From Pocillopora damicornis (lineage: Eukaryota): 64,000 nt of DNA. This document shows, piece by piece, positions 24,298 to 63,880 of the stretch; position 1 is the stretch's first letter, and every line of letters begins with the position of its first letter. The stretch is from NCBI RefSeq assembly GCF_003704095.1, contig NW_020843935.1:62001-126000 (forward strand), written 5' to 3'. The notes under the pieces are model-generated. The model did no database searches and was not told where the DNA came from. It saw only the letters and a list, made by a program, of their open reading frames with translations. A program made the position numbers and the translations under genes.

Positions 24298-25743
24298 NNN
24301 NNNNNNNNNNNNNNNNNNNNNNNNNNNNNNNNNNNNNNNNNNNNNNNNNNNNNNNNNNNNNNNNNNNNNNNNNNNNNNNNNNNNNNNNNNNNNNNNNTGC
24401 CCGTAACCTCCCCTTTGTAAGCCTTTTTTAAGCAAACAACCTACAATATTCAGATGGTGATAACTGGTGAGTACCCTCTGTTTGACATATTGTGCCCCTC
24501 CCCCCCTCTTAGGAACGCAACACATTAACCCGACCAGGGCTCAAAACCTAACCTTTCGGCCCCAAATTCATAGTGCTAGTCACCAGGTCACCGTCTTTTT
24601 CACGAAAAATAAGAAAATTATTGATATTTGTTTTTACAGTGGGCGTGGGTAACTGTCATTAGGTTGTTATCTAAACTCAGGAGCTTACAAGAGTACTCTG
24701 AGTGAACTATCCTATGGACTCTTCCTTTTGACTGGAAGCTTTATAGTTTTTTTGAAATATTCTTTAAAAAGGCACCTTTCGGCACTGGTCATATTTGAGC
24801 ATAATTGGGTAATAGTGTTGTCGGTGCGTTACGCTATGTATATTCGAAAATATCGGTATTGAAAAAAGTTCACTTTCATTTCAATTTACAAAAAAATTTA
24901 CCGTAAAATCCATACCCAATCGAAGAAATTCGTGGAAGTCCTTTGTATTTTGAAACCGAGATAGTTGTGGTTGAACATCCATTTCTAATTCCTAAAATGT
25001 ATTAGAATCGACCAGACAGGTGCTTCATTTCAAAACCTCGCTTAGAGAGAAAATACAGTTCTCCGGCTTCACTAAACATAGGTAATGTTTTATCACATAG
25101 AGACAAGCTTTAGGCGCTACTTACGAAACAAGCTCTAAATAGACACTTAAACGTTTAAACAAACAATTGCAAACCACCGTTTAATTTTACTGAAGTGCCG
25201 AGGACTAATTAATTAAGCTTACGGCACACACTCACCTACACTCGAACTGTAAAAATGTTAAATCACGTCTTCCCTACAATCCTGCTGAAATAGTCTCGCT
25301 TCGTATTGGGAAAAAGTGTTGAGGAAAATTTTACGTACTTTTCAGATTTTTTCTGCAACACACTTACTGGTCAACATGTCAATGAAAACGAATTTTAAAC
25401 TTTTTTTACCTTACAAAACGTTAGTCCTGTGACCACCTTACGGGTACGTTCAGCTTTATGGTTTCCTCAGATTTTTTTGGTACTACCTGAATATAAAGTA
25501 GGCCTAATTGTCTTGGGACTGCTGCATCTTCAAATTCTGTTGTCCATTTAACGTGCATGTTGAACGCAGCGTAAGCAACGGCACAATTAGATATACACAA
25601 ACCCTTTACATCTCTTGTTTTTACGTTGCAAGATGGCAAAATTTGAAGCAGCACATTTACGAATCTATACAAAAGAATATGGTTGAATTTGTATTTACAA
25701 AATGTATTTTTTACTTATCTCACAGGTTGCTTGAAGTTACGAA

Positions 25744-28700
25744 CTATTCAAGACATCTCTGGCAAATTAAACAGGCTCTAGAGTAACAAGGGTGAACAAC
25801 ACGCCTCCAGAATGTGCGAAACATTGCGTAATATTTTATCATGTCCTTTCCTTCCCATTGATTGATCATACGATGTAGTTTTTCGTACTTATAGTCGGGA
25901 GAGTGTGCATATAAAAGAGGAACAAATGAACGAACATTATAATGCTCGTCATCATCATACCGACCATCGCTATCGGCCTTGTGATGTCTGTGGCGAGACC
26001 CTTTATGTTGTCTTTTACCTGGACGTGTGTTTTGACTAGCAACTTTTCTTGCCGCCTTTATCAGGGCATTAGCTAAAGCCTTTCCAACTGTATTCACAGA
26101 ATACTCATTTCTACTTGCGTTGGACCTTGAAGCCCGAGGGGGAGCGTCTTGTCTCGTCACAGTGGGAACCACTTGATATAGCGGCACTGGAGGACCGGAA
26201 CGTTGTGGTGGGTTTGGTGGCGGTGGTAACGAAGAGGCGGGAGGTGCAGGGGCAGGAGCAGGGTTGGGGATCTGCCGCATGCTAGGTTGAGCCTGTGACA
26301 GTGCTTGCGACAACGCTTGCACTAATCTATCATTACTGATTGGTTGAATACCTTGCTGCATGTTTTGTGCCAAGGCTTGTACAAGAGCAGCTGTTAAAAG
26401 GTCTGGCGGCTGGTTTCGCGCCTGAGCTTGAGTTGCAGCGAGAGCCAAGGCAGATGCAAGGGCATTCGGCTGAGACTGGGTCATGGAAGAGCGAATGGCA
26501 TTGGCAAACATTCCGGTTAAACCATTATACAGAAGGGGATCATAGCCTGTTTGGCCAATAGAGGAGAGGACATTAGGGAACTGTTGGATACCAGGTAGCG
26601 AAAGAGGGGAGGGATACATGAGTGATGAAGGGTATTGTAATTGTTGGTTGAGTGGGGAAGCGTACGAAGGCAAAGGTAAGCCTAAAGATTGCATTAATGG
26701 TGACTGCAAACTGCCCATGCCTCCGGGATATAAAGACCCTCCCTGTGTCATAAGCCTATTGTTTAAGAGAAGAGGAGAAACTGGATTTAACGAAGGTAGT
26801 CCCATAACAGGGTTGGACATTAACATGTTATTTAGTCCTCCCATTGGTGCCGCAGGTGCTGACGAGGACACCGTTATTGCTGCCGGCGGTGATGCGGCTA
26901 TAGTCACTTGTCCAGGTGGAGCAGCAAAATTTTGTGACGAAGGTGTGGCAATAACGGTTCTGGGTGGCGAAGCTTCAGCCAAATACACTGCAGGGGTGTA
27001 AACGGGGGCTGGAGGTGATTGCACCATTGGTTGTTGATACATTATAGGAGCCGGTGGTGGTGCAGGAACAATTACGGGAGCTGGAGCTGGAGCCGGTTGA
27101 GGCTCTGGTGGAGATGCAATTATGTATTGTGGTGGGGGAGCTGGCACTGGGGGTGGAGGAGCAATAATGTATTGTGGTTGTGGCGGCGGTGAAGGTGCAG
27201 GTGCGAGGGCATACTGGGGTTGAGATTGTGCTTGAGCAGGTTGTGCCATTACTATTTGAGGTTGTTGACCGGCTGGTGACGCTTCCGAGGCGGCAGGCAT
27301 TTGTGCAATGATTATTTGGGGAGAAGGCTGTGGGGTAGATTCTGCGGGAGCGGGCAAGGTTTGAGCATAAATCACGCGTGGTGTTGGTGACATCGGTACA
27401 TTTTCATGTTGTTCAGCCTCAGCCGTTTCGCCGTTATCCCCAATCTCTAGATTTAGATTGATGTTGGCAGGAACTGGTGGTGTCCCTCTTTTAAGTAAAG
27501 GGTTTTCAGACTGGATGTCTATGATTTGTGGCCGTGCAGGCGGCGGTGGGATAGGTCGTGGGGTTGGTGGCGCGGGCTGCGGTGTCGGAGGAGTGGTTGG
27601 TGGGGTTGTTGGCAGAGGGGTTGTTATCGGGGGTAGGGTAGTTGGAGTTGTTAACGGTGTCGTGAGCGTCGTGGGTGTTGTTGTGGGTGTAGTAGGCGTT
27701 GTTGGTGTCGTAGGCGTTGTAGGTGTCGTGGTAGGTATCTTCTTTGCCGTTGGTGCCGCAGTTTCAGCTTCCTCGTCCAGTTTGAAAGCCTCATCTTTAG
27801 TGTTTATTGTGTTATCAGGTGGCAAAACAATGAAAGGCTCATCGTCTACCACTGGTTCATTGTTGGAAATCTGTTTTTTATACAAGTTTGGGTCGTACCA
27901 AGGATGTAGGCCTAGGAAATGTCCCCAATAGGGCTTTCTCGCTGATGGTAGGTAAGTTCTTTTCCAAGTGAAATCTTTTAGTAGAAAAAAAAACAAAACA
28001 AAAATTAGTTGTGATTACTTTTGGTTCCTATGGCCTGAGATGAGCTAGGGTATTGCTTGTTATCCAATCGAGGATAGCCCATCAGCCTCCGGTCTTTTTG
28101 ACAGGTGTCCTTAACGTTACTCACCCGGTTGGACAGAAGCAGCATCATGTACCTCCGCCCTAAACATAAAAATACTGTGACACAAAGAATTTTTATACAT
28201 TGCAGTACAGACGGTATACCTTAAATTGGCTATAGCGGTCTGAATTTTACCTTATCGGCCTTATAAATGCGAATTTTCTGGTTCTGACACAATAATATGG
28301 CGTCGATTAGTCGGATTGTTCATGTCGACAATAGTGTATCAGGTGAAACATACATAGACTGGCCCCGTGAGTAGCATAAGACAATTTTTTTTAAATTAGA
28401 AACGAATATAATCGTCTTTGTGTGACCTCGATCGGTTTACGTGTAACATGAATATGTTGGTCACATGTGATTAAAAATGTAATTCCTTGATTATATGCAC
28501 CTTACCATTGGATCTTCTTGGCTTTGTTTCACCAGTGTGCAAGGAAGCAATTAGATTCCTTTTGTGATTTAAAACTGTCGTAATGAAATAGCCATTTGTA
28601 TCTTTCATGGGTCTGACATTTTCATTGTCTATGGCTCTTTTGACTTGCGGGTCACCATCTCCGTGTGAAGCTCCGGCCCACTTGTCGGTTCTCCGTTTTA

Positions 28701-28833
28701 AAGTGATTGTCTTTAGGTGTGCGGTCTTCCTGTTATGAAAAGCAGTTCCTTCATGTATCGTTACCATGAAGATGAAAATAGAGACACATAGCATCACAAA
28801 CTCTCTCACATGGAGGGCATATAAACGTTTCAT
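25744..28833 (-). CDS. Gene A: secreted Pro/Thr/Gln-rich orphan protein (852 aa) with mucin-like TTP tract and C-terminal Cys cluster
   Basis: complement(join(25744..27974,28506..28833)) with a phase-1 intron (AATG|GTAAGG ... CTACTAAAAG|AT). Signal-like segment FVMLCVSIFIFMVTIHEGTA, basic propeptide with KR/RR, and C-terminus HPCYSRACLICQRCLE*. Confidence 0.85.
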
Positions 28834-29888
28834 GTTGCCCCCGGCGAATTCTTGGCCCTTTTCGCAATCATTTCGTCCCAAATAAGGCAAACAACATCCT
28901 CACCACAGGTCCTTGATATTTAAGATATACAGAGAAGCAAAATATCTATCTTAAAACGATAAACATCACTGGACTGTCACTAATTTTCCCATCGGAGTCT
29001 TGTTTTACTTAGAGTACATAATTAACCAACTTTTCGTTTAAATATTTATGCCTCGAAGCAGAAAACTAGTGTTTGAAAGACTAGCAGGTTTAATCAGGTG
29101 CTAAGTTACCATACGCGCAGGATTTTTTATCCAAAAACGCTAACTTTAGAGGTTATTGTAAATGCAGTTTTTTCGCGGAAATAGGTACCTTGATAACAAT
29201 GATAACTTCACTTTTGAGATCGTATTTAACTTAGGTAAAGACATGCTAACTTATCATCATAACTCAAAAAGTTGAGTCGACTTTCCCGATCGTGAGTTAT
29301 AGGGAATAAAAAAAAAAAACTCCTCTTACAGGTTGAATCATCAGCCTCCCTCCAGGTTCGCCAACGGGCTTTAAAACGCCTTCTCCGTATTGTTATAATA
29401 ACGGAAAAAAGGTGTAATTAAACGAGCCTAATTAAGCTACCCAGTGTGATATTATTGTTCGTATTTGGTATGTAAGCATGCAGACAAAAGGAATTGTTAA
29501 CTTTTATTTAAGTAAATATTTGTTCGATTCTTGGAGTCCTGGGTAACACATTCACCCTATTAAGAGAATTCCGAAGCTCCTAGTTGACAGTTTTATGAAC
29601 AAAAGCTTAACTACATAAAGTATTACTAATAGCGCGGGGTAATCAAATCGTAAACGACCAAAACTCTCACAGTGATTTTATCGCCCAGGAGATGAAAACC
29701 TAAAATTGCAGGAGGGAAGTTCAAATGGTTAATTCGGTCACACCTGCCCAATCCGGACAATAAAGCGACCAGCATGGAAACGGGTGGTGCTGAATATTAA
29801 ATTTCGCCGTTCTTCTATGTAGAAGTAACCACAAACAAGATACTCTTTCTTTCTTTCTTATTCGTTTAAGTCTCAATATATTTAGGCG

Positions 29889-32512
29889 ATGAGATTTGCC
29901 TTGTTTTGCGTGTCCATACATTTGCTTTTTCTGGGTCATGTGATAGCAAGGGCAGCACAATCAGTGAGACTTCAAAGCCGCCGATTTAAGTCCTCACATC
30001 GAATTCATTCAAGGTTATACAGTCATGGAAAGAATCAAATTGACAAGAACAACAAGCATGGTATGTAAGGCGATGTAAAAGTTAACAATAATACATTCGT
30101 ATGTTTAGTCAGTGACATCATGAACTATTGAGTGTATTTTTATTGTTTTTGAACTTAAGAATAAATAAATCTTATACTAAAAGACAGCTCACTCTTGACA
30201 AGAGTCTGCATTCCGTTAGGTAGTGATCTCAAGACGATATTTCTATTTTTGCACTCCAAATGTGATTTGCCTTTATAAGCATGACTGTTAAGAATAACTG
30301 CGACTGATAATCGCAGAGTTTCTTTTTTTTTTTTTTTTAATTTTAGATGACCTCGTTACACCAACATTGTCTTTTGTTTTTTTTACTTAAAAAAAGGGGT
30401 CCATATTGTTATTCTGATCCAAAAAGAGCCGTCATTATCCTTTCATTATTAATTCCCCTGTGGTTCCAAACCACTGGCAAAGATAGGTTTGAAATACATT
30501 GAACTTAGTTAAACTTCTTTCCCACCTGTATAAATTTCTTTAAAATTTCATTTGTGTCCTCAGGATTAAAAAGAATCTCTCCTTTGAGGCGACAGTGCTA
30601 ATCACATGTTTTTAAGACCGACCTATTATACATGGCTTGAGATAAGCTGACTTATCCCTTTTTTTTTACAGGGCCAGGAAGTGTACCAATGAATGTGAGG
30701 CATAGACATCTTTTTCATTCGATATTTAAGCACCGTAAAAAGTTCTTAAATGCTAAAGGTTCCCCAAAAGAAGTGATCGTCAGGGTGAATGGACAAAATG
30801 TTTATTCCAGCAAAGCTCAAGGATCAAACTTCTCCATCAATGCTAGCGTACCAACGACTTCTCCTCCTCCTCCTCCCTCGCCTCAAACACACAATATCAA
30901 CCTCCACATTAACCTTACTAGACCAGTAAGCCCCCCTGGGAGACCAAGTGACCAGCCGATTATTATAGCTCCCCCACCAAGGCCACAGCCAGTTGTAGCT
31001 ATAGTTCCTCCGATGGCATCACAACCTGCGCCAGTACAAGTTCAACCCATGGTGGTTCCTCAAGTACAACCTCAAGTACTACCACTTCCTGCTCCCACCA
31101 CTGCACCAGCGCCCCCTGAAAAGAAGGGCCAATCAAGTCTCAGTAAAATATTACTTACGGCTGCTTTGTTGAAGACTCTATCGGGAGGAGACTCTTCTGA
31201 AAGCGCAACACAAGGATTTCCATCATTGATGCAAAACCCACTTGCCTCTAATGGCTATTCTCTTAATTCTCTGCTCCCGGGTACTTCAGGTGTTGCTGCT
31301 TTGCCATCAATAGGGAATCTTCCTCTGGGCTATCCTCAGATTGCGACTCAGCCCGTCGGAAATCCCTCACTGGGATATCCTCAAGGTAATCTCCCAGTAT
31401 TAGGATACCCAGCGCAAACTGTTCCACAAACAGGGTCACAAGCCTTGGGATATCCAGCAACGTCAGGCGTCCTAGGAGGCCTTAATGCGGCAAAACCTGG
31501 CGTCATGGGATATCCAGCCATTGGCACAAACATGGGATATCCAGCCATTGGCACAAACATGGGATATCCAGCCGTTGGCACAAACATGGGATATCCAGCC
31601 GTTGGCACAAACATGGGATATCCAGCCGTTGGCACAAACATGGGATATCCATCCACGGGAAATCCAGGCATGGGATATCCCGCTGTAGGGAATCCAAGCT
31701 TGGGATATCCTGCCGTTGGGAACCCTAATGTGGGAAATCCTGTTGTAGGAAACCCATATTTGGGCTACCCTGCAAGGGGTGTCCTGCCGGGCGGTGTAAA
31801 CCAGAACGTAAGGTATCCTGCCAATTGGAATCCAAATAACAGGTATTTAGACGGCAATAAGCAAAACAGTAGAGATCCTATTAGTGGGAATCAAAACTTG
31901 GGCTACCCGGGAGGAGCTAATCAAAACGTAGGGAATCCATCCGGAACCACCCAGAACTTGGGTTTTCCTGCTGCTGCGAGCCAAAATATGGATGCTGAAG
32001 CAACGATACCAAACTTTCTGAGTGGGCTAGCTCCTGAACCTTCTGCTAGCCCTCTTGAGGCTAACAATCCACCATTACCTGGTCCATCACCTGGTGTACA
32101 ATCAAATGCACCAACCGCTACTGTGCCTCCTCCAGTATCTTATAATGCCCTATTGCCTGCGAATGCGTCGCCTGTTGGTACCGCTGGTGGGAACCCTAAC
32201 CTTGCTCAAGGTCAGGGCCAGACTGACACTTCAGAAACACCCGTTGTGCAGCCTAATGTAGGAGTAGCAGGGACACCTGGAGTAGTGACAGGTCTCTCTC
32301 AAGCTCAAGGACAGGGCACTGGCACAGTTCTGCCTGCAACAACATCAGCAGGTGTTCCAGGATTTGATCCCAGTTTGTGTTGGTGTGGTTGCGAGCCGAC
32401 GTGTGCTAATCCGTGTGACCTGTGCAATAGTAGCAGAGAGAATAGTTATGGCAACATTTTAAATCAGTACAATACTGGCTCAATAAATCCTTCCAATGGA
32501 CGGAAGAAATAA
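29889..32512 (+). CDS. Gene B: secreted Pro-rich/GYP-repeat protein with 6-Cys module (670 aa)
   Basis: join(29889..30060,30672..32512). Exon 1 is not in the ORF track and encodes MRFALFCVSIHLLFLGHVIARAAQSVRLQSRRFKSSHR...NKH. A phase-1 intron (G|GTATGT...TTTACAG) joins it in frame to the 607-aa ORF. Confidence 0.88.
31505..31650 (+). repeat. Coding 27-nt tandem repeat, (MGYPA[IV]GTN)x5 plus partial, in gene B
   Basis: Near-identical ATGGGATATCCAGCC[AG]TTGGCACAAAC units. Confidence 0.95.
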
Positions 32513-34428
32513 TCGTTCGTAATCAGCAGAGGCTTCCTCGCAATTTTTGTAAGAGAGTTAGAGAGAGGTCTTCGTTTTCTTATATTGTATTATTCTTCAT
32601 TGTCAGCAAGGCTGAAATGATAAGTAGTGCAGACCTGAACATGAAAGTGTATTGTTAATCTCACTGGTATTTCTGAAAATTGACTTAATATATTGGTATG
32701 CAGTATGTATTGGTGCTTGGTTAGTAGCTCGAAGTTAAATTGTCTTTGAGAGAAAAAGACCAGATTGGCGCCAGATTTCCTCTCATGAAAGGTGGAAATA
32801 AACAGTAGCTCAGAAAATTTTATTCCATTTTACGACAGCTATGAGGTTTTAAAATGGCTAGGATAAAATTGAATCAATGTACGATTCAACTTAGTGTAGT
32901 TTGAGGGTCCCCTATCAGAGTAGACTGCTCTTGTGGTTACTGACGTTTGAAAAGCTTGTTACTTAGCAACTCACCTTCCCACTTACTTAGTCAGAGAACG
33001 AAGTGAGCCGTGCTTAATGGGATGGCAAAATATATCACGTCGGGCTAAGATGATGGGTCGTCATTGGCACCTTTCAAGTTTCTTCGTTCACAGACTTTGG
33101 TGCTAGATAATTCTTTTGCATAGATACATTTTAAACAATTTGTATTAAAAAGGCTTTTTTATTCAACGTTCATGTTGTTCTGTGATAATTGTCCTTGTAC
33201 ATTCTGTTACAACAATTATCGTCGATAACAATGACAAAAGTCTCGATAACTTGAGCTGCAATTGTTATCGAAGTCAATGATGACTTCCGTTCCGGTTGGT
33301 AAATGTCACTCACCGGTACTGGTATGGGGTGATGGCTCTTACAACAAACGATCAGCATGTTTCCATTGTTATCACCAGAATTATTTTTACGGTTAATTTT
33401 ATTCACCACTAATGATTATAATTTGTCAATTTTTACGACGAAGGCTAACGTTAACCCCATTGATACCCCTGTTACCGAAATTAGTCCCCCTCAGAACTAG
33501 CCTCGCCCTGAAGATCATATGATGCACTAGACTGTTGCTCCCACCCTCAGAATACTTAATAGGTTTGAACTGCACTGCACGAAAGCGCTTGAACCTGCCC
33601 TGGGCAGAGGCTTTTCATTCACTAGACTTTTGCAATTCCATAAAATATTTTTTAATGAATCAGCAATTACTTTCCTTCGCAAAATGCTTGTGAATGGTTT
33701 CCTCCAACTAATTTGAAAAGCTTTCAAAATAACAGTCAGTTAAGTGTATTGTCAAGACATCAGAACTATTCTTGAAGTAATCAATTCTAATCTACATCTT
33801 TTCCTTAATTTGCATTTCTTGCCACGCAAGTAGCTCAGGATATTTCAGACAAAGATGAAGTAATTCTAGAAGCGGTCAAATGCTATGACGAATTGATTGC
33901 ATGCACGGGAAGAACTAATTTGTAGATGATCTTATGGACTCAGGTCATTTTTATGGTCATTGATTTGTACTGATTTTTTTGTTCAATTTCCTCCTTTCTT
34001 GTTGAACAAATGAGCATTGTCGAAGCGCCTGTAACAATCAATGGGCAATTCATTACCCTGCTTTCTTTTCATAGTCGTAAGAGGAAGTGGGATTCCATAA
34101 CAATGGAAGTTTTGGTTTAAGAAACTTCCATCACGACTCATCTAACGTCTTAAAGAACCCCAAGCTGAATCCACCAGTTTAAGTTATAAACTTTATTTTA
34201 TGAGTCACGAGAGAAAGGGAGATTACTTGTAAGCAGTCAAACTAATCCTCCCATATCTAAAAAAAATGAAGAAAGGATCACTCAAGAACAATGCAAAACC
34301 AGTTTTGTCGACTGGTGTTTATAAATATTTGATTCATGGCGTTCGAGTTAAACGGGGCATTTACAGCACTTTAGTGCTAGGTAATAAAACATGGAAAGAA
34401 ATAAGGTTTGTGACCCATAACTCATAGT

Positions 34429-37400
34429 ATGAAAATCAAGGGAGAGGTTCTTCTGCTATGGCAAGTTCTGTGTGTACATTGGGTGATCACTCTGGCTGGA
34501 CATCATAGAAAAAACGGCCAAAGGTCACGAACAGAATCTGACGTGAAGGATAGAAGACACAAATTAAACAACTACTTTCTCCAAAGGAGGATAAATGGTA
34601 AGAGTTGAGTGGAAATGTTATCATGAACTATCTTTTTTTCTGTTAGTTGAAGTGTAACGGGAGTGGATATAGGATCTGAGCGAGACAAGGATGACCTAAC
34701 ACAAAGTATTAGGAAACTTAATCTTCCCATCCTTTACTTGACAATGAAATTGAACCGTGAAGCGCACGATCTGTAGAGACAGTATTTATTACATATATAC
34801 AATTAGAGGCTGGAAAAATAACAGACGGTGATTGAAGGTAGAATCGACCCTGTCGAATGTGATATTATCCGTGAAGTGTTAATTTGGCCCAGCCGTGGTT
34901 GACGTGACAAAAAGTTGCCGAAAAATGAAAACAGATCATACGAAAACGCTGTTTGTATAAATTTTTCAGGATGTTTTGACTTTGTGTGAGATGAAGTGAA
35001 AAATGGTCGTTTCCTGTTGATGAGGTATCGGGTTTCAATATCAGTAACAAAATCAATGTTTGCACAAATTTGGTTGCAACTTCAATTCAGATATGCCTTT
35101 TGTATCGAAATGACGGCTGAAATCTGCTGCAGCGCATGCTGTTACACTGCGCTTTAACGTGATTTGATATTAAAACGCTCGACCTTTAAACTTAAAAGAG
35201 ACAGTCATATGAACTACATGCCACCAATCAACCTGACTTTAAGATCATACTAAGGATGAAAAATGTATTCATTTATTATTTCATACAATTCATTGGTACA
35301 TTAATTGAAATTCAAAAAGAGTGCTCACGATATAAATAAGAGGAAATATGTTAGATTACAAGTAGCATAGTACAAGTTCGAAAACTGCCTTCAAATGAGA
35401 AAAAAAAGTAGACGGAGATCGTAGTTTTAAAAATGACTCAGCAACCTGACTGGACACGTGAAACGAACGTGTAATTAACGAGCATCCGCTAGGAAAGCCT
35501 TCGAATAGAAAAAAAATAATTTGAATCATATGTGCATTGTTTGTAGCTTCCAGTAGTTTAAAATAGATCGCGATGAGATTGAAAAGAAGGCTGCGGGATT
35601 TCGTTATGTCAGGGTAGAAAGATTGAACATGGAATCGTCTTTGGTCCAATAATTTTCTTAGAGTTGAAAATTAAGTAATGATTTCAAGATAATTTTCAAA
35701 GGATGATATAAGAATCATTTGGCTTTCGGATCTTTTACTTCTGCCATAAAATGCGTGGATTAGTGACTTTCCGAATGACCAGGATTGTATTTTCAATCAT
35801 TTATAAGAATGAACTAAGGTACCTCCTAATATGAGTAGTGCTCAAGTGTATTGTGGAGTTTTTGCATCAAGTGATCTAACACTTGGGGGATGACCATGGA
35901 AACTCTTTAGATCATTATAGAACACTACTCTGAACTACAATCGTGTGGTCCCTTTTATTCGTGGTAGTCTGAGAAAATGCAAAGGACAATCGAGTATAAA
36001 CTTTCAAAATGTAGTGGTGCATGGTTTTTTTCCTCTCTACATCAATTTGGTGCATCCAACCCCGCATTTATAATCTTCTCAATTAGTAAAGAATTTTGCA
36101 TCAAGGCTGTGAAGTGTCGCTCGGAGTGATTCAAAACCTATATCAATTGTTTGTCAAAAATGACTAAATAAATATATGTATTGATGTTACCATTTTACTA
36201 CCAGAAAACAGTAAGAATTGTGGTTCAGGAAATTGAGCTGGAGAGTGTAAGGGTAAGATAGAATTAGGACTAGAGCCACGTGTTTCAGAGCAACATTTTA
36301 CACCGAGAACATGTGCAGTAAAGGTGAAAGAATTCTAACTCAAATCCTTCTATTTTAGGATCTCTTCACCATCCACTTAATCATCTAGGATCTATCAGGC
36401 GATCTTTTATCGGGCGTAAGGTACACATTAAGGGTGCACCAAAAGGTGTTATCGTGACCATAAATGGGCAAAGAGTTGACCCAAATACTGGCAGCACAAT
36501 ATTACCCATACAGCCACCTCAGCCAGCACCCCAGCCAGTACCACTACCAGGTCGGAATGTTCCCATTAATGTTCATGTTCACGTAAATAAAAAATACAAC
36601 GATGCCAACATCATTGGTCAACGTAAGCAACCCATTATAATCACTGCACCCAATCCTTATCGAGCTGTGAGACCAATTGTGATTCCGATGCCAGCACAAG
36701 TGCCAGCTCCACAGCCCCTTATATTACCTGCTCCATTACCTCCTCCTCCGCCTCCGGCTGTCCTTCCAGCGCCTGTTCCATTACCTTTACCAGCACCTCT
36801 ACCACCACCAGTTGCCATTCCAGTTCCAGCTCCAGCTCCAGCTCCACCTCCAGATAAAGAAGACTCAAACTTTGCAGAAATTCTTCAAACAGCTGCATTG
36901 CTTAACACTCTAAACAAAAAAGAGGAAAGTCGCCCAAAAGTTATACCAGTTGTTCAGCCTGTAATTACTCCAATGGCTTATCAGCCTGGCAGAAATCCAG
37001 CGCAGGGATATCCAGCGCATGGAAATCCGAATCAAGGATATCCGCCGGATGAAAATCCAAATCAGGGATATCCAGCAGGTGAAAATCCAAATCAGGGATA
37101 TCCGGCTGGTGAAAATCCAAATCAGGGATATCCAGCAGGTGAAAATCATAACCAGGGATATCCAGCCGGTGGTGGGAATCAAAATCAAGGATATCCAGCA
37201 GGTGGAAGCCAAAACCAAGCCACAACAGGAAAAGCTCCAGTAGGAGGTACAAATATTCTTTCTGGACTATCAGGAATCCTGCCTTTGTTGCTTCCCTTCA
37301 ATTGTAGATGTGGATGCGAAAGAAGGTGCCCGGACCTTTGCAACCTTTGCAAAGACGTCGACGAGGAAATAATTGACACATTAGACTGTTGTAAGTCAAT

Positions 37401-40400
37401 GCCATGTCCCTGTGTAAATGCCGCAGCAGGCACACAGCCTGTAGGGGCAACTGCAACAGGAACTGTGTCAACTCCCAGTGGGGGTGCCGTAGTTCCTCAG
37501 CTGCAACAAGGTGTTGTGCAGCAGGCACCAGCATCAACCGTAAACCAGATACAACCAATGCAAATCTCTAACGGTGCTACTGCCCTTGCAGCTCCCCCCC
37601 AACCTGGTCTGGTGCCACCATCGCAGCCAGCTTCAGCTCCACCTCTCCCTTCATTATCTGTATTACCTGGACCTCAGGCTCCCGGTGTATCATCGCAACT
37701 TGCATCAGCACCACCTCTGCCCTCTTTAGGGCGGCCAGCCTCAGCGCCTCCTCTCACTTCATCATCTGCATTACCTGGACCTCAGCAACCTGGTCCAGCA
37801 TTACAGCCAGCTTCAGCGCCCCCACTTCTGCCACTTGTTCCTACATTACCACAAGCCCCTAATCCTCCTGTTGTTTCATCGCCTGGAACTCAGTCTTCTG
37901 GCACAGCATCTCAGCCGTCTGCTCAAGCACCTAAACCTTCATCATCTGGTTCTGCTCTAGCGCCTGCTGTTCCACCCCCACTCCCACCCAAACCAGAAAT
38001 TTCTCCTCCAAAAACAACCTCATCAAAGCCAGGTCGGGTCCCGGCTCCTGTATCCCCTGAAGCTGTTCCACAACCTGAGCCAGAAATTCCAGCTCCAGGT
38101 CCTCCTGGTTCGACTGTCCCACCTAAGCCGGAGATTCCAGGAAAAGGGATAAGTACTGGAACGGGTACTGAACCGCCTGGGAACGAAAATACTGCACCTG
38201 AATTAGAGCCACCTCCCACTGATACAGGCTCTCCAGGTCCTGACAATTCAAAGACTCAAGGTGAGTTAGTTGCTCCTCCTCCGGACAACTACGGACCCAT
38301 CGAGATACCAACAGTTCCAGTCTTACCGGGTGAATCACCAACCACTGGTGAGTATCACGTTTAGAGAAATTATAAGTAAAACCGTCTTTGGAGCAGGCGC
38401 GTTTCTTAAACATAATTTTAAAACCGTTGGGACGTAAAGAATGTTATATTTGCAGTATCCTTTTTGAAGAAAACTGCGTTGAAAGATAATGAAGGAAAAT
38501 TTTAGTAGACGTAACTTCATTTTATTGAATGGAAATGAGGAAAGAGTCGAGTTTAACGCGTGAAATGTTACAAAGAAGAAAAAAAGCATAGTTGGATCTA
38601 ATGATCTACTATCCTTTTGAGTTGATGAGTGATCGAAATGGAATGCTCTCCAAACTCTTATCTTTTGGATGGTTATTTCTACAATAGACTCCTTGAGAAG
38701 TTTACTGACAGCTTTTCGTACTTTTTGAAAATATGTTGTTGCTGATTTGTAGGTCTCTATATAAAAATGTTCTCTTTGTGCTGATTTGAATATATTCATG
38801 TAGAAATGCTGGAATGCTTTGTTAAGTGTTTCCATTATCTTTTAGCGATTTTCACTGTAGACTTCAAACCTGAGCATATCACCTTTAAAGTCTAAATCAA
38901 GCTGATGGTGTGCTTGGCTGGAAGCAGTTTCGAGATATTATTCTCTTTCCTTATGTGACATTCAAATCTATTCTTCCCATTTCCAGGTCATTCTCAAACT
39001 ACAAGTTATCCTGTTGGTCCAGGGCCTCCTGGCGCAAATCCAGCACCTCCTAGTTCATCTACCTCTTCCACAAATCCTTCGCCCCCTCTTCCGTCATCGC
39101 CACTCATGAAGAATGCATATCCAGTTCCTCCTCCAGCCCCTCAGGTATTTATCATAAAGGAAAATAGCAATCCAACAAGAGGCCCAGAGGACAGTAAAAG
39201 TGCTGAGGCACTCAATAGTTTAAGCGAATCATTTGAAAGTGCTTTCAAAGAAGCGCTTAAATCAGAACGAAGGAAAATAGGAAAATATAGAAGTCATGCT
39301 AAAGGGCATTTTAGTATTAAACCCGAGGAAGAAGACAATTGGAATACAAAAGACAGCGAAACAGATGATCAAGAGGAGGAGGAGGACGAGGAGAAGGTGC
39401 AGTCTCATGGCGGCTCTCGGAGAGATTTCACCGACGGGGAAGACAGTAAACTCAACGAGGATTTTTCTAACGATGATATAAATGATAATGGCAATGAAGA
39501 TGACAGTAATGATGATGATGGTATTGATGATAATCATGATAATAATGCTGATTCTAATACTGATGAAATAGATGATGATGATCATAGCGATGATAATAGT
39601 GATGACGATGGCAATAATATTGATATCAAGGCGGAAAAAGAGCCGCCATACGACTTGGACCAACCTCGTCATTCTCATGCTCTATCATACTTCAGAGGAA
39701 ATGAGCAAAGATACGAGGGAAGACGCAAAATGTATCCGACAAATAAAGGAAGGAAGTATCAAAGACTTCATGATCGGCATCGAAATGGAAAACAACGCAA
39801 TGAAGAAACGAGAGAGAGTGAGCTGTTGTATGATCGTTCAGTCAACGGTGCTCTCAACCGTGATCGTAATAATGTTCATTCTCGCTATCACAGAAAGAAA
39901 TTTCCATTATCTAAAACAGAAGAGGACGAGGAAATGTCACCAGAACATGATTCCAATTCAATCCATGTAGAAAATGTTCAATACAATCCATTGGAAAATA
40001 CTGAAATTTCCCGCCTTCGTCATGGAGGTGCAAGTAGGACTTTCAAGAGCCCAAAGCATAGTTTAAAATCTCCAGAATCCCCTAAGGAAAAGCACCATGT
40101 GCCTTATAATCATGATAGAATCAAATTTCGTCATTTTCAGGACAAAGGCTCAGACAAGCATGCAGGCCACGATAAAGAGGGTGACCACACCTTCATCAAG
40201 GAACATCATGATCATCATTTGAGCCATTCAAAAACTGCAATGTTACCTGAAGATGAAATCACTGAAGAGTCAGCCTCAACGATTGAAGAAACTAGTTATT
40301 CAGGGCATAATGAGAAGGTTAAATCCTTAAAGTCATTGAAGAATTTCTTAACTTATACACACTACGCGAAAGGTGCGTCTCATCACCTTGTAGAAGACAC

Positions 40401-40587
40401 TCGCACTAAAGACAAAAAAACTCCTCTTGGTACTGTGGAGTCATTTAAATCAGGCAATCATAGGCATTCTAGCAAACATAGCAAATCAAAACAGGAAAAG
40501 GACATTGCAGAGGATTATAGTGAGAGTTCGGGTAATGAATCTGGTCAAAATTATAACAGTGGCGATTATGAAGATATTGGCAGTTAG
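34429..40587 (+). CDS. Gene C: secreted Pro-rich/GYP-repeat/Cys-module protein with Asp/Asn-rich and His-rich C-terminal exon (1252 aa)
   Basis: join(34429..34597,36359..38347,38987..40587). Exon 1 is not in the ORF track and encodes MKIKGEVLLLWQVLCVHWVITLA|GHHRK...QRRIN. Two phase-1 GT-AG introns join it in frame to the 636-aa and 493-aa ORFs. Confidence 0.87.
37003..37200 (+). repeat. Coding 30-nt tandem repeat (consensus QGYPAGENPN, 7 GYP units) in gene C
   Basis: CAGGGATATCCAGCAGGTGAAAATCCAAAT-type units. Confidence 0.95.
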
Positions 40588-43214: not shown

Positions 43215-45408
43215 CTGAATATGTATTAAAAAGGAAGCTTAATAATAAATGACAAAGAAATCGTAAAAAAGTCACAGAAAACAATGCCGCAGCATGATTA
43301 GAAATATTCCCAACTAACTACTCCTTTTTCATATTGCTTGGTTTCATCAAATGAGTTGATGATGTAAATGAGCCACCAAAATGAATTTCTAAAGCCGACG
43401 TTTTTAAGCGTTAACCTGTCGCTCGAAATGTTGATTTTACAGCATTGCCATGCTTCATCTTTTATCATCATTGTCATGATTATAATTTCTATCTGTCATT
43501 GCTATTCGTTTTGTGAATTACTATCGTTAACAGAAATTGGTCAGAGATGATTGGTGAGTCACCTTCCGTGTTAGTGCAGTTTTAATCACAAGAAACAGGC
43601 ATTTAATGAAAATTGTTCTTTTAACTCGTTAGAAAGCAGTCGAATGGTTATAAGATAGAAGCCGCAAAGCTAATTGGTGAAGATAAGACGAAGAAAACAG
43701 CGTTAGAGTATGAAACTTACTGTGTGCCCCTTTGATTTAATAGTTGCAAGAGAAGTCTTAAGTTATCGTTATGTAGCAGACTTACGTCAGAGGAGGTGTC
43801 CACGCATCATGCCTTCCATACACGTTGTCACGTTGTAGTCATCAAATATCGTCAAAGTTTCATTAATTAATGACGATTTATGCGTAAGTTAATGAAAGCT
43901 AAGCTGCAGAAATGTTGATGCATTCATGCCTCATTGCAACATGCTGCTGCATAACAGAATTCAGAGCCTAAGTCCAAAAACCACTGGGAACTCACGTAGT
44001 CCTAAGGAGTTATATTTGGCAGTCCAATGCAAATGAAAATTCCGATTGAAATACCTTCTCATGTAAGAGCACACAAAGGAAATGGGATTGCAGCAGCTAA
44101 TGCATCATTTTGTCTGTAGTCCTCTTTAAATAATTTGGATTTTATGGTTGAATAATTTCGTTAAGGGAATAAATGATCCAAAATTTCCACAATCTGTCAC
44201 CAAAAGTGATTGGGAAGAGGACAGCTAACTCTTTCTGAGACGAAGTCTCGCTATTTCTGTTATTGCACGAATACAGTACGTTTTCGTCCCGTTATGTTTG
44301 CCTCAGTTTTGTTGTCAGGCAACAAATTACCAATATTATGGTACCCTTTTACGGTTAACAGAGGCTTTAAGTATTAACATAAGATATTAGCTTATTAGAA
44401 AGTATCAACCTGTTGATATATTATCTATTTGCCGTGATTTTTTTTATTTCATTATCTTTAGATAATTTCCCGCTTCAAAATTATATTCAATAAGTTAACT
44501 GATGAGCAAATTGCGTTATGAACCAACTTTTTTTGTTACATCACTTCTATTTACATCATTTTTACATACTAAAAATCGTCCAAAAAATACTGTTAGATAT
44601 TTCCCTCCTACTATCATTGTTCAGAGCTCAATTTTAAAAATGTTCAAAGCCTTAGACCGACTCGTAGAGTTGCTTTGTTGCTCTTACATAGCATTTTGCA
44701 GAAATATGCAATTTGCATATACGATATTTGTTTTGATCTTTTCTGTATCATGGTTATGGGTGAGCTGATTCACAGATATTCTTTTGATGAATTGGTGGTG
44801 GTCGTATTTTTTTTTTTTCGTACGTCCAAAATCGTGGTTGGTGTAGGTAGACGAAGGAACGTCGTTATCGGTCTGCTTATTGCATCGTGAGTATGGGTGA
44901 GCTGTTGCTCACTTCGTTTTTGGAGCTGGTAGTGCTGCATAACTGATCTAAGTTTCTATTTGGTCTACACTCAGACGAATCTCCTCCCTGAGAAAAATTT
45001 TTCGCGAGTGTGGATCAAAATGGGACTACCTATGAAAATATTTTCAACTGAGAATTTCAGAGCCAAATTTCAAGTTATCAAAACTGCCAGCTACGGCAAA
45101 CATCACACTAATGAACGACTTTAAAAACGGAAAAAGGCAAGATGCTGAGCCGTGATTGGTTTTGAATTATGCAGCTGATTGCGTGAGAGGCTGGGAGCAT
45201 TTTCTGTACCAATCAAGTAGCATTGTGAGGTGCAACAGTGAATTGCTGTTGCTGCTCATTTGCAGAAAATGGCCCCTTCTGATCCAGTAGTTAGCCTGGA
45301 CGAATGTCTTTCATTACGTTCCTTTCACACCTTTTATGCTGTTTTTACTTTGGTGCAGCGTAGTTTTCTCTTTAGCACCACGTTTTTTCTTTTTCTTTTT
45401 ACGCTTAC

Positions 45409-63880
<18,472 letters not shown>

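What the first reader, a model, noticed from the sequence alone, without database searches (positions are those of the whole stretch)
25744..38347. Genes A, B and C form a paralog family recognisable only by an ordered string of micro-motifs
Seen in the same order among unalignable low-complexity spacers: (i) a Cys-Val signal-peptide core (LCVSI / FCVSI / LCVHW) on its own exon ending in a phase-1 intron; (ii) KGSPKEVIVRVNGQ (B, 30755-30796) vs KGAPKGVIVTINGQ (C, 36430-36471); (iii) an alternating beta-strand NINLNLEI (A) / NINLHINL (B) / PINVHVHV (C); (iv) PQIIIAQ / QPIIIAP / QPIIITAP; (v) an amphipathic helix DLLTAALVQAL (A, 26371-26403) / ILLTAALLKTL (B, 31148-31180) / ILQTAALLNTL (C, 36880-36912). 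Gene D has a weaker echo, HHALH..basic..FINVNGGGIY (20105-20134). Inference: these motifs act as self-assembly stickers in otherwise disordered chains.
Basis: partly seen in the sequence, partly recalled or inferred. Interest (0 to 1): 0.8.

Follow-up and report, generated by a model that had tools for sequence, protein, structure and literature searches.

The report
Conserved coral cluster of secreted disordered proteins
Three neighbouring coral genes encode secreted, mostly disordered proteins with a few strongly conserved short motifs: two of them (B, C) are true sister genes of an undescribed family shared by corals and sea anemones, but the evidence that the third (A) is related to them is weak.

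Summary

**B and C.** They are clear paralogs and can be aligned by ordinary BLASTP. They also share GYPAGG-type tandem repeats and a six-cysteine module, so they are not recognisable only by micro-motifs.

**A.** It belongs to a separate, well conserved, single-copy family.
- BLASTP, HMMER and whole-genome profile searches do not link A to B/C.
- Only hhalign gives a marginal local match over the NINL strand and the PQ-(I/V)3-A repeats (P about 1e-4 to 1e-3; 0 of 100 shuffles reached one of the three real scores).

**Conservation.** Motifs ii-v are the conservation peaks in orthologs of each family, so the first refutation test fails. The Cys-Val signal-peptide core is not conserved. The gene D echo is at chance level.

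**New here.**
- The A-B-C order is conserved in two other corals and mirrored in the sea anemone Nematostella.
- All three genes have a signal-peptide exon followed by a phase-1 intron and a giant exon. RNA contigs confirm this for A and B.
- There is no Pfam match, named homolog or paper.

**Function (inferred).** Cross-linkable extracellular structural or elastomer-like proteins whose conserved islands act as local folding or assembly sites.

Two earlier scan notes cover parts of this same stretch (the six-Cys module and gene C's acidic exon).

The parts
28506..28833 (-). Gene A exon 1: start codon, signal peptide and basic region (109 codons plus 1 base, so a phase-1 donor)
   Evidence: Sequence. 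RNA contig X4 record 26 joins 28506 to 27974.
25744..27974 (-). Gene A giant exon 2 (to the stop codon). Holds NINLNLEI at 27442-27465, PQIIIAQ at 27301-27321 and the DLLTAALVQAL helix at 26371-26403.
   Evidence: ORF. Ortholog alignment A1. RNA contigs cover it. AlphaFold2 predicts helices at residues 487-568.
29889..30060 (+). Gene B exon 1: signal peptide and basic region, phase-1 donor
   Evidence: Sequence. Spliced RNA contigs in runs X2 and X4.
30672..32512 (+). Gene B giant exon 2. Motif ii 30755-30796, iii 30893-30916, iv 30953-30973, v 31148-31180; 27-base GYPA repeats 31504-31756; six-Cys module 32378-32425.
34429..34597 (+). Gene C exon 1: signal peptide and basic region, phase-1 donor
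   Evidence: Sequence. Matches the N-terminus of the Oculina model P0021.
36359..38347 (+). Gene C giant exon 2. Motif ii 36430-36471, motif v 36880-36912, 30-base GYPAGG repeats 37003-37204, then the six-Cys module and a Pro-rich tail. GTGAGT donor after 38347 (phase 1).
39040..40587 (+). Later exon of gene C: Asp-rich and His-rich tail. Its exact start upstream of 39040 was not determined.
   Evidence: It is contiguous with the C protein in the Oculina model P0021 and adjacent in locus L002.

Best explanation
**What it is.** The stretch holds an ancient, syntenic three-gene cluster of secreted, largely disordered proteins.

**B and C.** They are tandem paralogs of an undescribed hexacorallian family. 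From the N-terminus the family carries:
- a signal peptide and a basic stretch;
- an N-terminal set of conserved islands: a KG(A/S)PKxV(I/V)VxVNGQ hairpin, an INL(H/N)INL strand-like motif, Pro-flanked (I/V)3 stretches, and an amphipathic ILxTAALL helix;
- 9-10-residue Gly/Tyr/Pro/Asn tandem repeats;
- a CxCGCx3Cx3Cx2C module;
- in C only, a long Pro-rich, then Asp-rich and His-rich tail.

**A.** It is a separate, single-copy, older-looking family. It has a Thr/Pro mucin-like stalk, PQ-(I/V)3-A repeats, a four-helix Ala/Gln/Leu region and a basic amphipathic helix. A shares with B/C only a short module (NINL plus PQ-hydrophobic repeats) and the LTAAL helix core, at marginal significance.

**Shown.** Gene models, expression of A and B, B/C paralogy, motif conservation, synteny reaching to Nematostella, and predicted disorder.

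**Inferred.** The proteins are extracellular structural or elastomer-like matrix components. The conserved islands would be local folding or assembly sites, Tyr and Cys would supply covalent cross-links, and the repeats would supply extensibility.
For: - **B/C paralogy:** BLASTP, alignments A2/A3, and the whole-genome profile search finds only B and C.
- **Orthologs of each gene:**
- **Conservation peaks at the motifs:**
- **Synteny A(-) B(+) C(+):** seen in loci L001 and L002 and mirrored in Nematostella locus L004.
- **Nematostella C-like N-domain against the coral B/C profile:** hhalign E 1.2e-20.
- **RNA contigs and splice joints:**
- **Tandem repeats:**
- **AlphaFold2:** mean pLDDT 59 for the B/C N-domain, with only a hairpin and a helix, and 39.7 for A, with helices only.
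- **No Pfam family:**
- **Design parallel:** elastomeric cnidarian proteins combine disordered repeats with cross-linking motifs (PMC4321713).
Against: - **Function:** nothing shows where the proteins are made or deposited. No cell-type, proteome or localisation data could be linked to these genes.
- **Self-assembly:** untested.
- **A may be a true distant paralog after all:** it has the same two-exon, phase-1 structure, is linked head-to-head with B in both corals and Nematostella, carries three motifs in the same order, and gives hhalign P down to 1e-4.
Confidence: 0.6

Rival explanations
1. One reading: A, B and C all descend from one ancestral gene. Their sequences have diverged beyond alignment except for an ordered string of micro-motifs, kept because they act as self-assembly stickers.
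For: - The motif order iii, iv, v is the same in both families, and each motif is a conservation peak.
- hhalign pairs NINLNLEI with INLHINL and PQIIIA with the (Q/R)P(I/V)3 motifs at P 6e-4 to 9e-4, and pairs the PQ-hydrophobic repeat regions at P 1e-4. No shuffle out of 100 reached the real score of 34.8.
- All three genes have a signal-peptide exon, a phase-1 intron and a giant exon.
- The head-to-head A-B linkage is kept in Nematostella.
Against: - BLASTP, HMMER and both whole-genome profile searches fail to link A to B/C.
- The Nematostella C-like protein matches the coral B/C profile at E 1e-20 but not the A profile. The resemblance does not grow stronger at the deeper node.
- B/C's strongest signatures (motif ii, GYP repeats, six-Cys module) are absent from A. 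A's strongest blocks are absent from B/C.
- The hhalign matches lie in Pro/Gln/Ile/Val-rich low-complexity sequence.
- Phase-1 introns after signal peptides are common (my own knowledge, not tested here).
Confidence: 0.35
2. B and C, and perhaps A, are structural proteins of cnidocysts (the nematocyst or spirocyst wall or tubule). They would be anthozoan counterparts of cnidoin or of the minicollagen-like and proline-rich capsule proteins.
For: - The architecture parallels cnidoin: signal peptide, long basic pro-region, disordered repeat core, short Cys-rich cross-linking modules (PMC4321713).
- The Nematostella gene at B's position ends in polyproline runs flanked by C-x3-C-x3-C-x3-C motifs, like minicollagen ends.
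- The genes occur in a non-calcifying anemone.
Against: - The coral six-Cys module has spacing 1-1-3-3-2, not the minicollagen 3-3-3-3-0.
- There are no Gly-X-Y or GxGQQ repeats.
- No expression or proteome link was found.
Confidence: 0.25
3. The cluster encodes skeletal organic-matrix (biomineralisation) proteins secreted by calicoblasts. Gene C's Asp-rich tail would bind calcium carbonate.
For: - Gene C carries an Asp/Asn-rich and a His-rich exon.
- The proteins are secreted and of low complexity, and the cluster resembles biomineralisation gene clusters in general design.
Against: - All three genes have orthologs in Nematostella, which makes no skeleton, and the Nematostella C-like gene has an acidic tail too.
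- The accession of the Stylophora ortholog of B is not in the 60-protein skeletal proteome table. That table also lists proteins under other accession types, which I could not map.
Confidence: 0.1

Closest known systems
Cnidoin (Hydra nematocyst elastomer; PMC4321713)
   Same: Secreted; long basic N-terminal pro-region; disordered, hydrophobic, Gly/Pro-containing tandem-repeat core; short Cys-rich modules suited to disulfide networking; prone to self-aggregation.
   Different: The repeat unit differs: GYP(A/S)GGN-type rather than QMQGCGQQxP. The Cys spacing differs. Cnidoin has no N-terminal island set ii-v. No sequence homology was detected, and cnidocyte expression is not shown.
Aneroin (sea-anemone silk-like repeat protein) and resilin-type elastomers
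   Same: Short Gly/Pro/Tyr/Asn-rich tandem repeats of about ten residues. Tyrosine is available for dityrosine cross-links (PMC6862824).
   Different: From memory, the aneroin unit is a different decapeptide. No reference sequence was on hand, so homology is untested. B and C also have conserved non-repeat islands and a Cys module.
Minicollagens and minicollagen-like proteins
   Same: Proline-rich stretches next to small Cys-rich modules. The Nematostella gene at B's position has polyPro runs with C-x3-C repeats.
   Different: There is no collagen triplet region. The coral six-Cys module has a different spacing and lacks the terminal CC.
Vertebrate SCPP gene cluster (an analogy only)
   Same: A tandem cluster of secreted disordered proteins with a shared signal-peptide-exon structure. 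Kinship is visible mainly through linkage, gene structure and short motifs.
   Different: The lineage is unrelated and no calcium-phosphate context is known. The introns here are phase 1. For gene A, the kinship itself is unproven.

Membership tests
B/C family (undescribed): is gene A a member? | KG(A/S)PKxV(I/V)VxVNGQ hairpin motif (ii) | tested here: not met
   No match in A or its orthologs by regular expression or block scoring matrix.
B/C family (undescribed): is gene A a member? | Detection by a family profile | tested here: not met
   HMMER scores are negative. The whole-genome search with the B/C profile finds only B and C, even at E up to 10. hhalign is marginal, P 1e-4 to 9e-4.
B/C family (undescribed): is gene A a member? 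| INL(H/N)INL strand motif, (Q/R)P(I/V)3 motifs and LTAAL helix, in this order | tested here: inconclusive
   They are present in A in the same order and are conserved. Shuffle p-values are only 0.03, 0.1 and 0.003.
B/C family (undescribed): is gene A a member? | GYP(A/S)GGN tandem repeats and the CxCGCx3Cx3Cx2C module | tested here: not met
   Both are absent from A. A has only 2-4 loosely spaced Cys at its extreme C-terminus.
Minicollagen / cnidoin cysteine-rich domain | Cys pattern C-x3-C-x3-C-x3-C-x3-CC | tested here: not met
   Coral B and C have C-x-C-x-C-x3-C-x3-C-x2-C in all orthologs.
Minicollagen | Central Gly-X-Y collagen triplets | tested here: not met
   None in A, B or C.
Cnidoin | GxGQQ-type Met/Cys-rich repeat core, and expression in developing nematocytes | tested here: not met
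   The repeat unit is different. Expression in nematocytes is not testable with these tools.
Coral skeletal organic-matrix / acid-rich proteins | Recovered from the skeleton proteome, and tied to calcifying lineages | tested here: inconclusive
   The accession of B's Stylophora ortholog is not in the skeletal proteome table. Orthologs of all three genes exist in the non-calcifying Nematostella.
Any Pfam family | A match above the gathering threshold | tested here: not met
   No family for A, B, C, C's tail or the Nematostella genes.

The most novel reading that the evidence does not exclude
A, B and C are the diverged products of one ancestral gene, kept as a three-gene cluster since before sea anemones and stony corals split. 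This would be a cnidarian counterpart of the vertebrate SCPP cluster, with kinship surviving only as gene structure, linkage and a few assembly motifs. Together the three proteins would co-assemble, through the shared INL strand, PQ-hydrophobic and LTAAL motifs, into a cnidarian-specific cross-linked elastic matrix, for example the spirocyst or nematocyst wall or another extracellular layer.
Probability: 0.25. Interest if true: 0.7.

Novelty: new variant of a known kind. Interest (0 to 1): 0.42.

Why it matters
**What it would add.** If confirmed, the cluster adds an undescribed, deeply conserved set of secreted structural proteins to the cnidarian extracellular toolkit.

- The B/C N-domain profile found only nine coral protein clusters among 1.84 billion representatives.
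- Even so, the family is shared by stony corals and a sea anemone and keeps its gene order.

**Why it is useful.**
- It is a clean case for studying how short conserved islands persist in otherwise fast-evolving disordered chains.
- It gives candidate Tyr- and Cys-cross-linkable elastomer sequences of interest for biomaterials.
- Nematostella orthologs exist, so function can be tested directly by knock-out and localisation.

Tried and rejected
**Searches that found nothing**
- Pfam scans of A, B, C, C's tail, D, E and the two Nematostella genes: nothing above threshold.
- ESM Atlas look-ups for B and for A's C-terminal half: no usable hit.
- Paper searches by accession, gene identifier and motif strings: zero hits.
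- Skeletal proteome paper: B's ortholog accession is not listed.
- Stylophora cell atlas text: no relevant terms.
- Nematostella matrisome paper and its supplements: no accession or sequence match. Its identifiers could not be mapped to these genes.

**Tests of A against B/C that were negative**
- HMMER with the B/C N-domain profile against the A family: negative scores, dominated by the composition-bias correction.
- Block matrices for motif ii and for the wide motif-v block: no significant hit in A.

**Smaller claims rejected**
- Gene D echo: rejected as chance.
- Cys-Val signal-peptide core: rejected as a family mark, because orthologs have Leu or Cys-Pro there.

**Technical limits**
- One hhalign shuffle script timed out before printing anything, and its re-run finished only the 20-column-window shuffle.
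- Look-ups of the Stylophora and Oculina loci found no record, and one coral locus came back without DNA.
- Exons were never joined. All searches used single exons by reference.
- The masked N stretches were left untouched.
Full report
**Source and setting.** The window is eukaryotic, from a stony coral.
- B's closest named relative is an uncharacterised Stylophora pistillata protein at 80% identity (PFX19686.1).
- The window's assembly is 234.35 Mb in 4,393 contigs. This fits the 234 Mb Pocillopora damicornis assembly (PMC6208414). That assignment is an inference.
- From about 18 kb to 48 kb the window holds five large ORFs for low-complexity proteins, none with a Pfam match.

**Check of the observation.** Every motif sits in the stated frame at the stated coordinates. 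The gene models hold.
- B: exon 1 runs 29889-30060 and joins 30672 across a GT..AG intron. Spliced polyA-RNA contigs from two studies show the joint.
- A: exon 1 runs 28833-28506 on the minus strand and joins 27974 in one RNA contig. Its donor is GTAAGG.
- C: exon 1 runs 34429-34597 and joins 36359, judged from canonical splice sites and agreement with an Oculina patagonica gene model.
- All of these introns are phase 1.
- Exon 1 carries 30-80 basic residues as well as the signal peptide.
- RNA contigs from four studies cover A and B, so both are expressed in colonies.
All queries were single exons given by reference.

**B and C.** BLASTP aligns them collinearly.
- N-terminal 330 residues: E 9e-8.
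- GYPA repeats: E 5e-14.
- Cys module: E 1e-5.

So "unalignable" and "recognisable only by micro-motifs" are wrong for this pair. Orthologs of each exist in several scleractinians. In a 15-sequence alignment, motifs ii, iii and v are the most conserved windows of the whole protein (100th percentile) and motif iv is at the 95th. The shared anatomy is:
- a signal peptide and a basic stretch;
- the VIVxVNGQ hairpin;
- INLHINL;
- two or three Pro-flanked (I/V)3 stretches;
- a Pro-rich spacer;
- the ILxTAALL helix;
- 9-10-residue GYP(A/S)GGN tandem repeats (27-base and 30-base DNA periods);
- the CxCGCx3Cx3Cx2C module;
- in C only, a Pro-rich, then Asp-rich and His-rich tail, which the Oculina model joins to the same protein.

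AlphaFold2 on the N-domain gives mean pLDDT 59, with only the hairpin and the helix predicted.

**A.** A is a single-copy gene. It has clear orthologs across Scleractinia and in Nematostella (XP_032233285.1).
- Its alignment shows many conserved blocks with no counterpart in B/C: DDEPYIVLPPDNTI, a Thr/Pro stalk, a roughly 80-residue four-helix Ala/Gln/Leu region, a basic amphipathic helix, and a C-terminal RSFVP...FRxFW...Cys end.
- NINLNLEI is at the 99th percentile of conservation, DLLTAAL at the 96th and PQIIIAQ at the 82nd.
- AlphaFold2 gives pLDDT 39.7, with helices only. Motif v is the third helix of the helical region.

**Is A related to B/C?** Evidence against:
- BLASTP gives E 2.3 and 0.15.
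- HMMER scores are negative after bias correction.
- The B/C profile finds only B and C in the whole genome even at E up to 10, and the A profile finds only A.
- The 1.84-billion-protein profile search returns no A-family member.
- The Nematostella C-like protein matches the coral B/C profile at E 1.2e-20 but does not match the A profile.

Evidence for:
- hhalign pairs NINLNLEI with INLHINL and PQIIIA with the (Q/R)P(I/V)3 motifs at P 6e-4 to 9e-4. It pairs the PQ-hydrophobic repeat regions at P 1e-4, probability 57%.
- None of 100 local column shuffles reached the real score of 34.8 from one of the three hhalign settings (shuffle mean 21.3, SD 4.0, maximum 33.8).
- Block matrices built from B/C give p 0.03, about 0.1 and 0.003 for motifs iii, iv and the core of v.
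- The gene structure is the same, and the linkage is conserved.

These matches lie in low-complexity sequence and the motifs were chosen after the fact. I put homology of A at about 35%.

**Smaller claims.**
- The Cys-Val core of the signal peptide is not kept in orthologs of A or B.
- The gene D echo scores p 0.013, but an unrelated stretch in the next ORF scores 0.003 with the same matrix. I treat the echo as chance.

**Synteny.** The order A(-), B(+), C(+), followed by C's acidic exon, recurs in two other coral assemblies (L001 and L002). It is mirrored in Nematostella locus L004.
- The A ortholog lies head-to-head with a gene that has GYPS repeats, an ILQL... helix, a Cys cluster and a polyPro/C-x3-C tail.
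- Next to that comes a C-like gene with GSPKGVVVRVNG, INLNINL, PQIIM, LKAAALL, nine GYPS repeats, a Cys-rich block and an acidic tail.
- The cluster therefore predates the split between sea anemones and stony corals.

**Distribution.** The big profile search found ten proteins at E up to 0.001.
- Nine are coral B/C proteins.
- One is a bacterial RTX adhesin whose roughly 117-residue repeats each weakly mimic the layout "I.GAP.G..L.V.GQ.I ... M.LHVNAT" (at most 14 bits per repeat). I read this as convergence of beta-strand patterns.
- The library lacks the Nematostella C-like protein, which would score 76 bits. Absence from that search is therefore weak evidence.

**Mechanism.**
- Shown: the proteins carry signal-peptide-like N-termini, are mostly predicted disordered, and carry a few strongly constrained islands, tandem Tyr/Gly/Pro repeats and a compact Cys module.
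- Inferred: they are extracellular structural proteins built on the known elastomer plan of disordered repeats plus cross-linking motifs plus self-association (PMC4321713). The N-terminal islands would act as local folding or assembly sites.
- Whether the site of action is the cnidocyst, mesoglea, a surface layer or the skeleton is open. Nematostella orthologs argue against a purely skeletal role.
- Self-assembly could not be tested, because the complex predictor was unavailable.

**Novelty and score.**
- There is no Pfam family, named homolog or paper.
- The membership tests for minicollagen and cnidoin domains fail on Cys spacing and repeat type.
- I therefore class this as a new variant of a known kind (cnidarian secreted repeat proteins with cross-linking modules) rather than a new member of a described family.
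- It is a solid, moderately interesting finding.

Noticed in passing
L004:3-2312 (-), 5992-8160 and 8867-9169 (-), 10001-13314 (+): Nematostella keeps the same three-gene cluster in mirror image: a C-like gene with all of motifs ii-v, GYPS repeats, a Cys block and an acidic tail; a B-position gene; and the A ortholog LOC5508653.
   Followed up: yes
L004:5992-6700 (-): The Nematostella gene at B's position ends in long polyproline runs flanked by C-x3-C-x3-C-x3-C motifs. This resembles minicollagen termini but has no collagen triplets.
   Followed up: partly
P0032 (bacterial RTX adhesin, 2660 aa): It is the only non-coral hit of the B/C N-domain profile. Its roughly 117-residue repeats share the layout I.GAP.G..L.V.GQ.I ... 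M.LHVNAT at 14 bits or less per repeat, and Pfam does not cover those repeats. I take this as probable convergence.
   Followed up: partly
window 18242-23270 (+) and 45314-47734 (-): Two more giant ORFs flank the cluster, for low-complexity proteins with no Pfam match. The first (D) has a signal-peptide-like start. The second contains an internal duplication of about 50 residues that includes KPIIWHIP.
   Followed up: partly
window 30860: RNA contigs from different studies carry in-frame insertions (CTC or CTCCTCCTC) in B's polyproline tract. This is a length polymorphism between colonies or species.
   Followed up: no
P0021 (Oculina patagonica isoform X2): This annotated C ortholog goes from the GYPAGG repeats straight to the Pro-rich region and lacks the six-Cys module. 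The module may be removed by alternative splicing inside the giant exon.
   Followed up: no
window 23730-24430 and 55400-56100: Masked or gap N stretches.
   Followed up: no
Search of protein representatives library: The library lacks the Nematostella C-like protein, which scores 76 bits (E 3e-16 at library size) when tested locally. Negative results from it are weak for cnidarians.
   Followed up: yes
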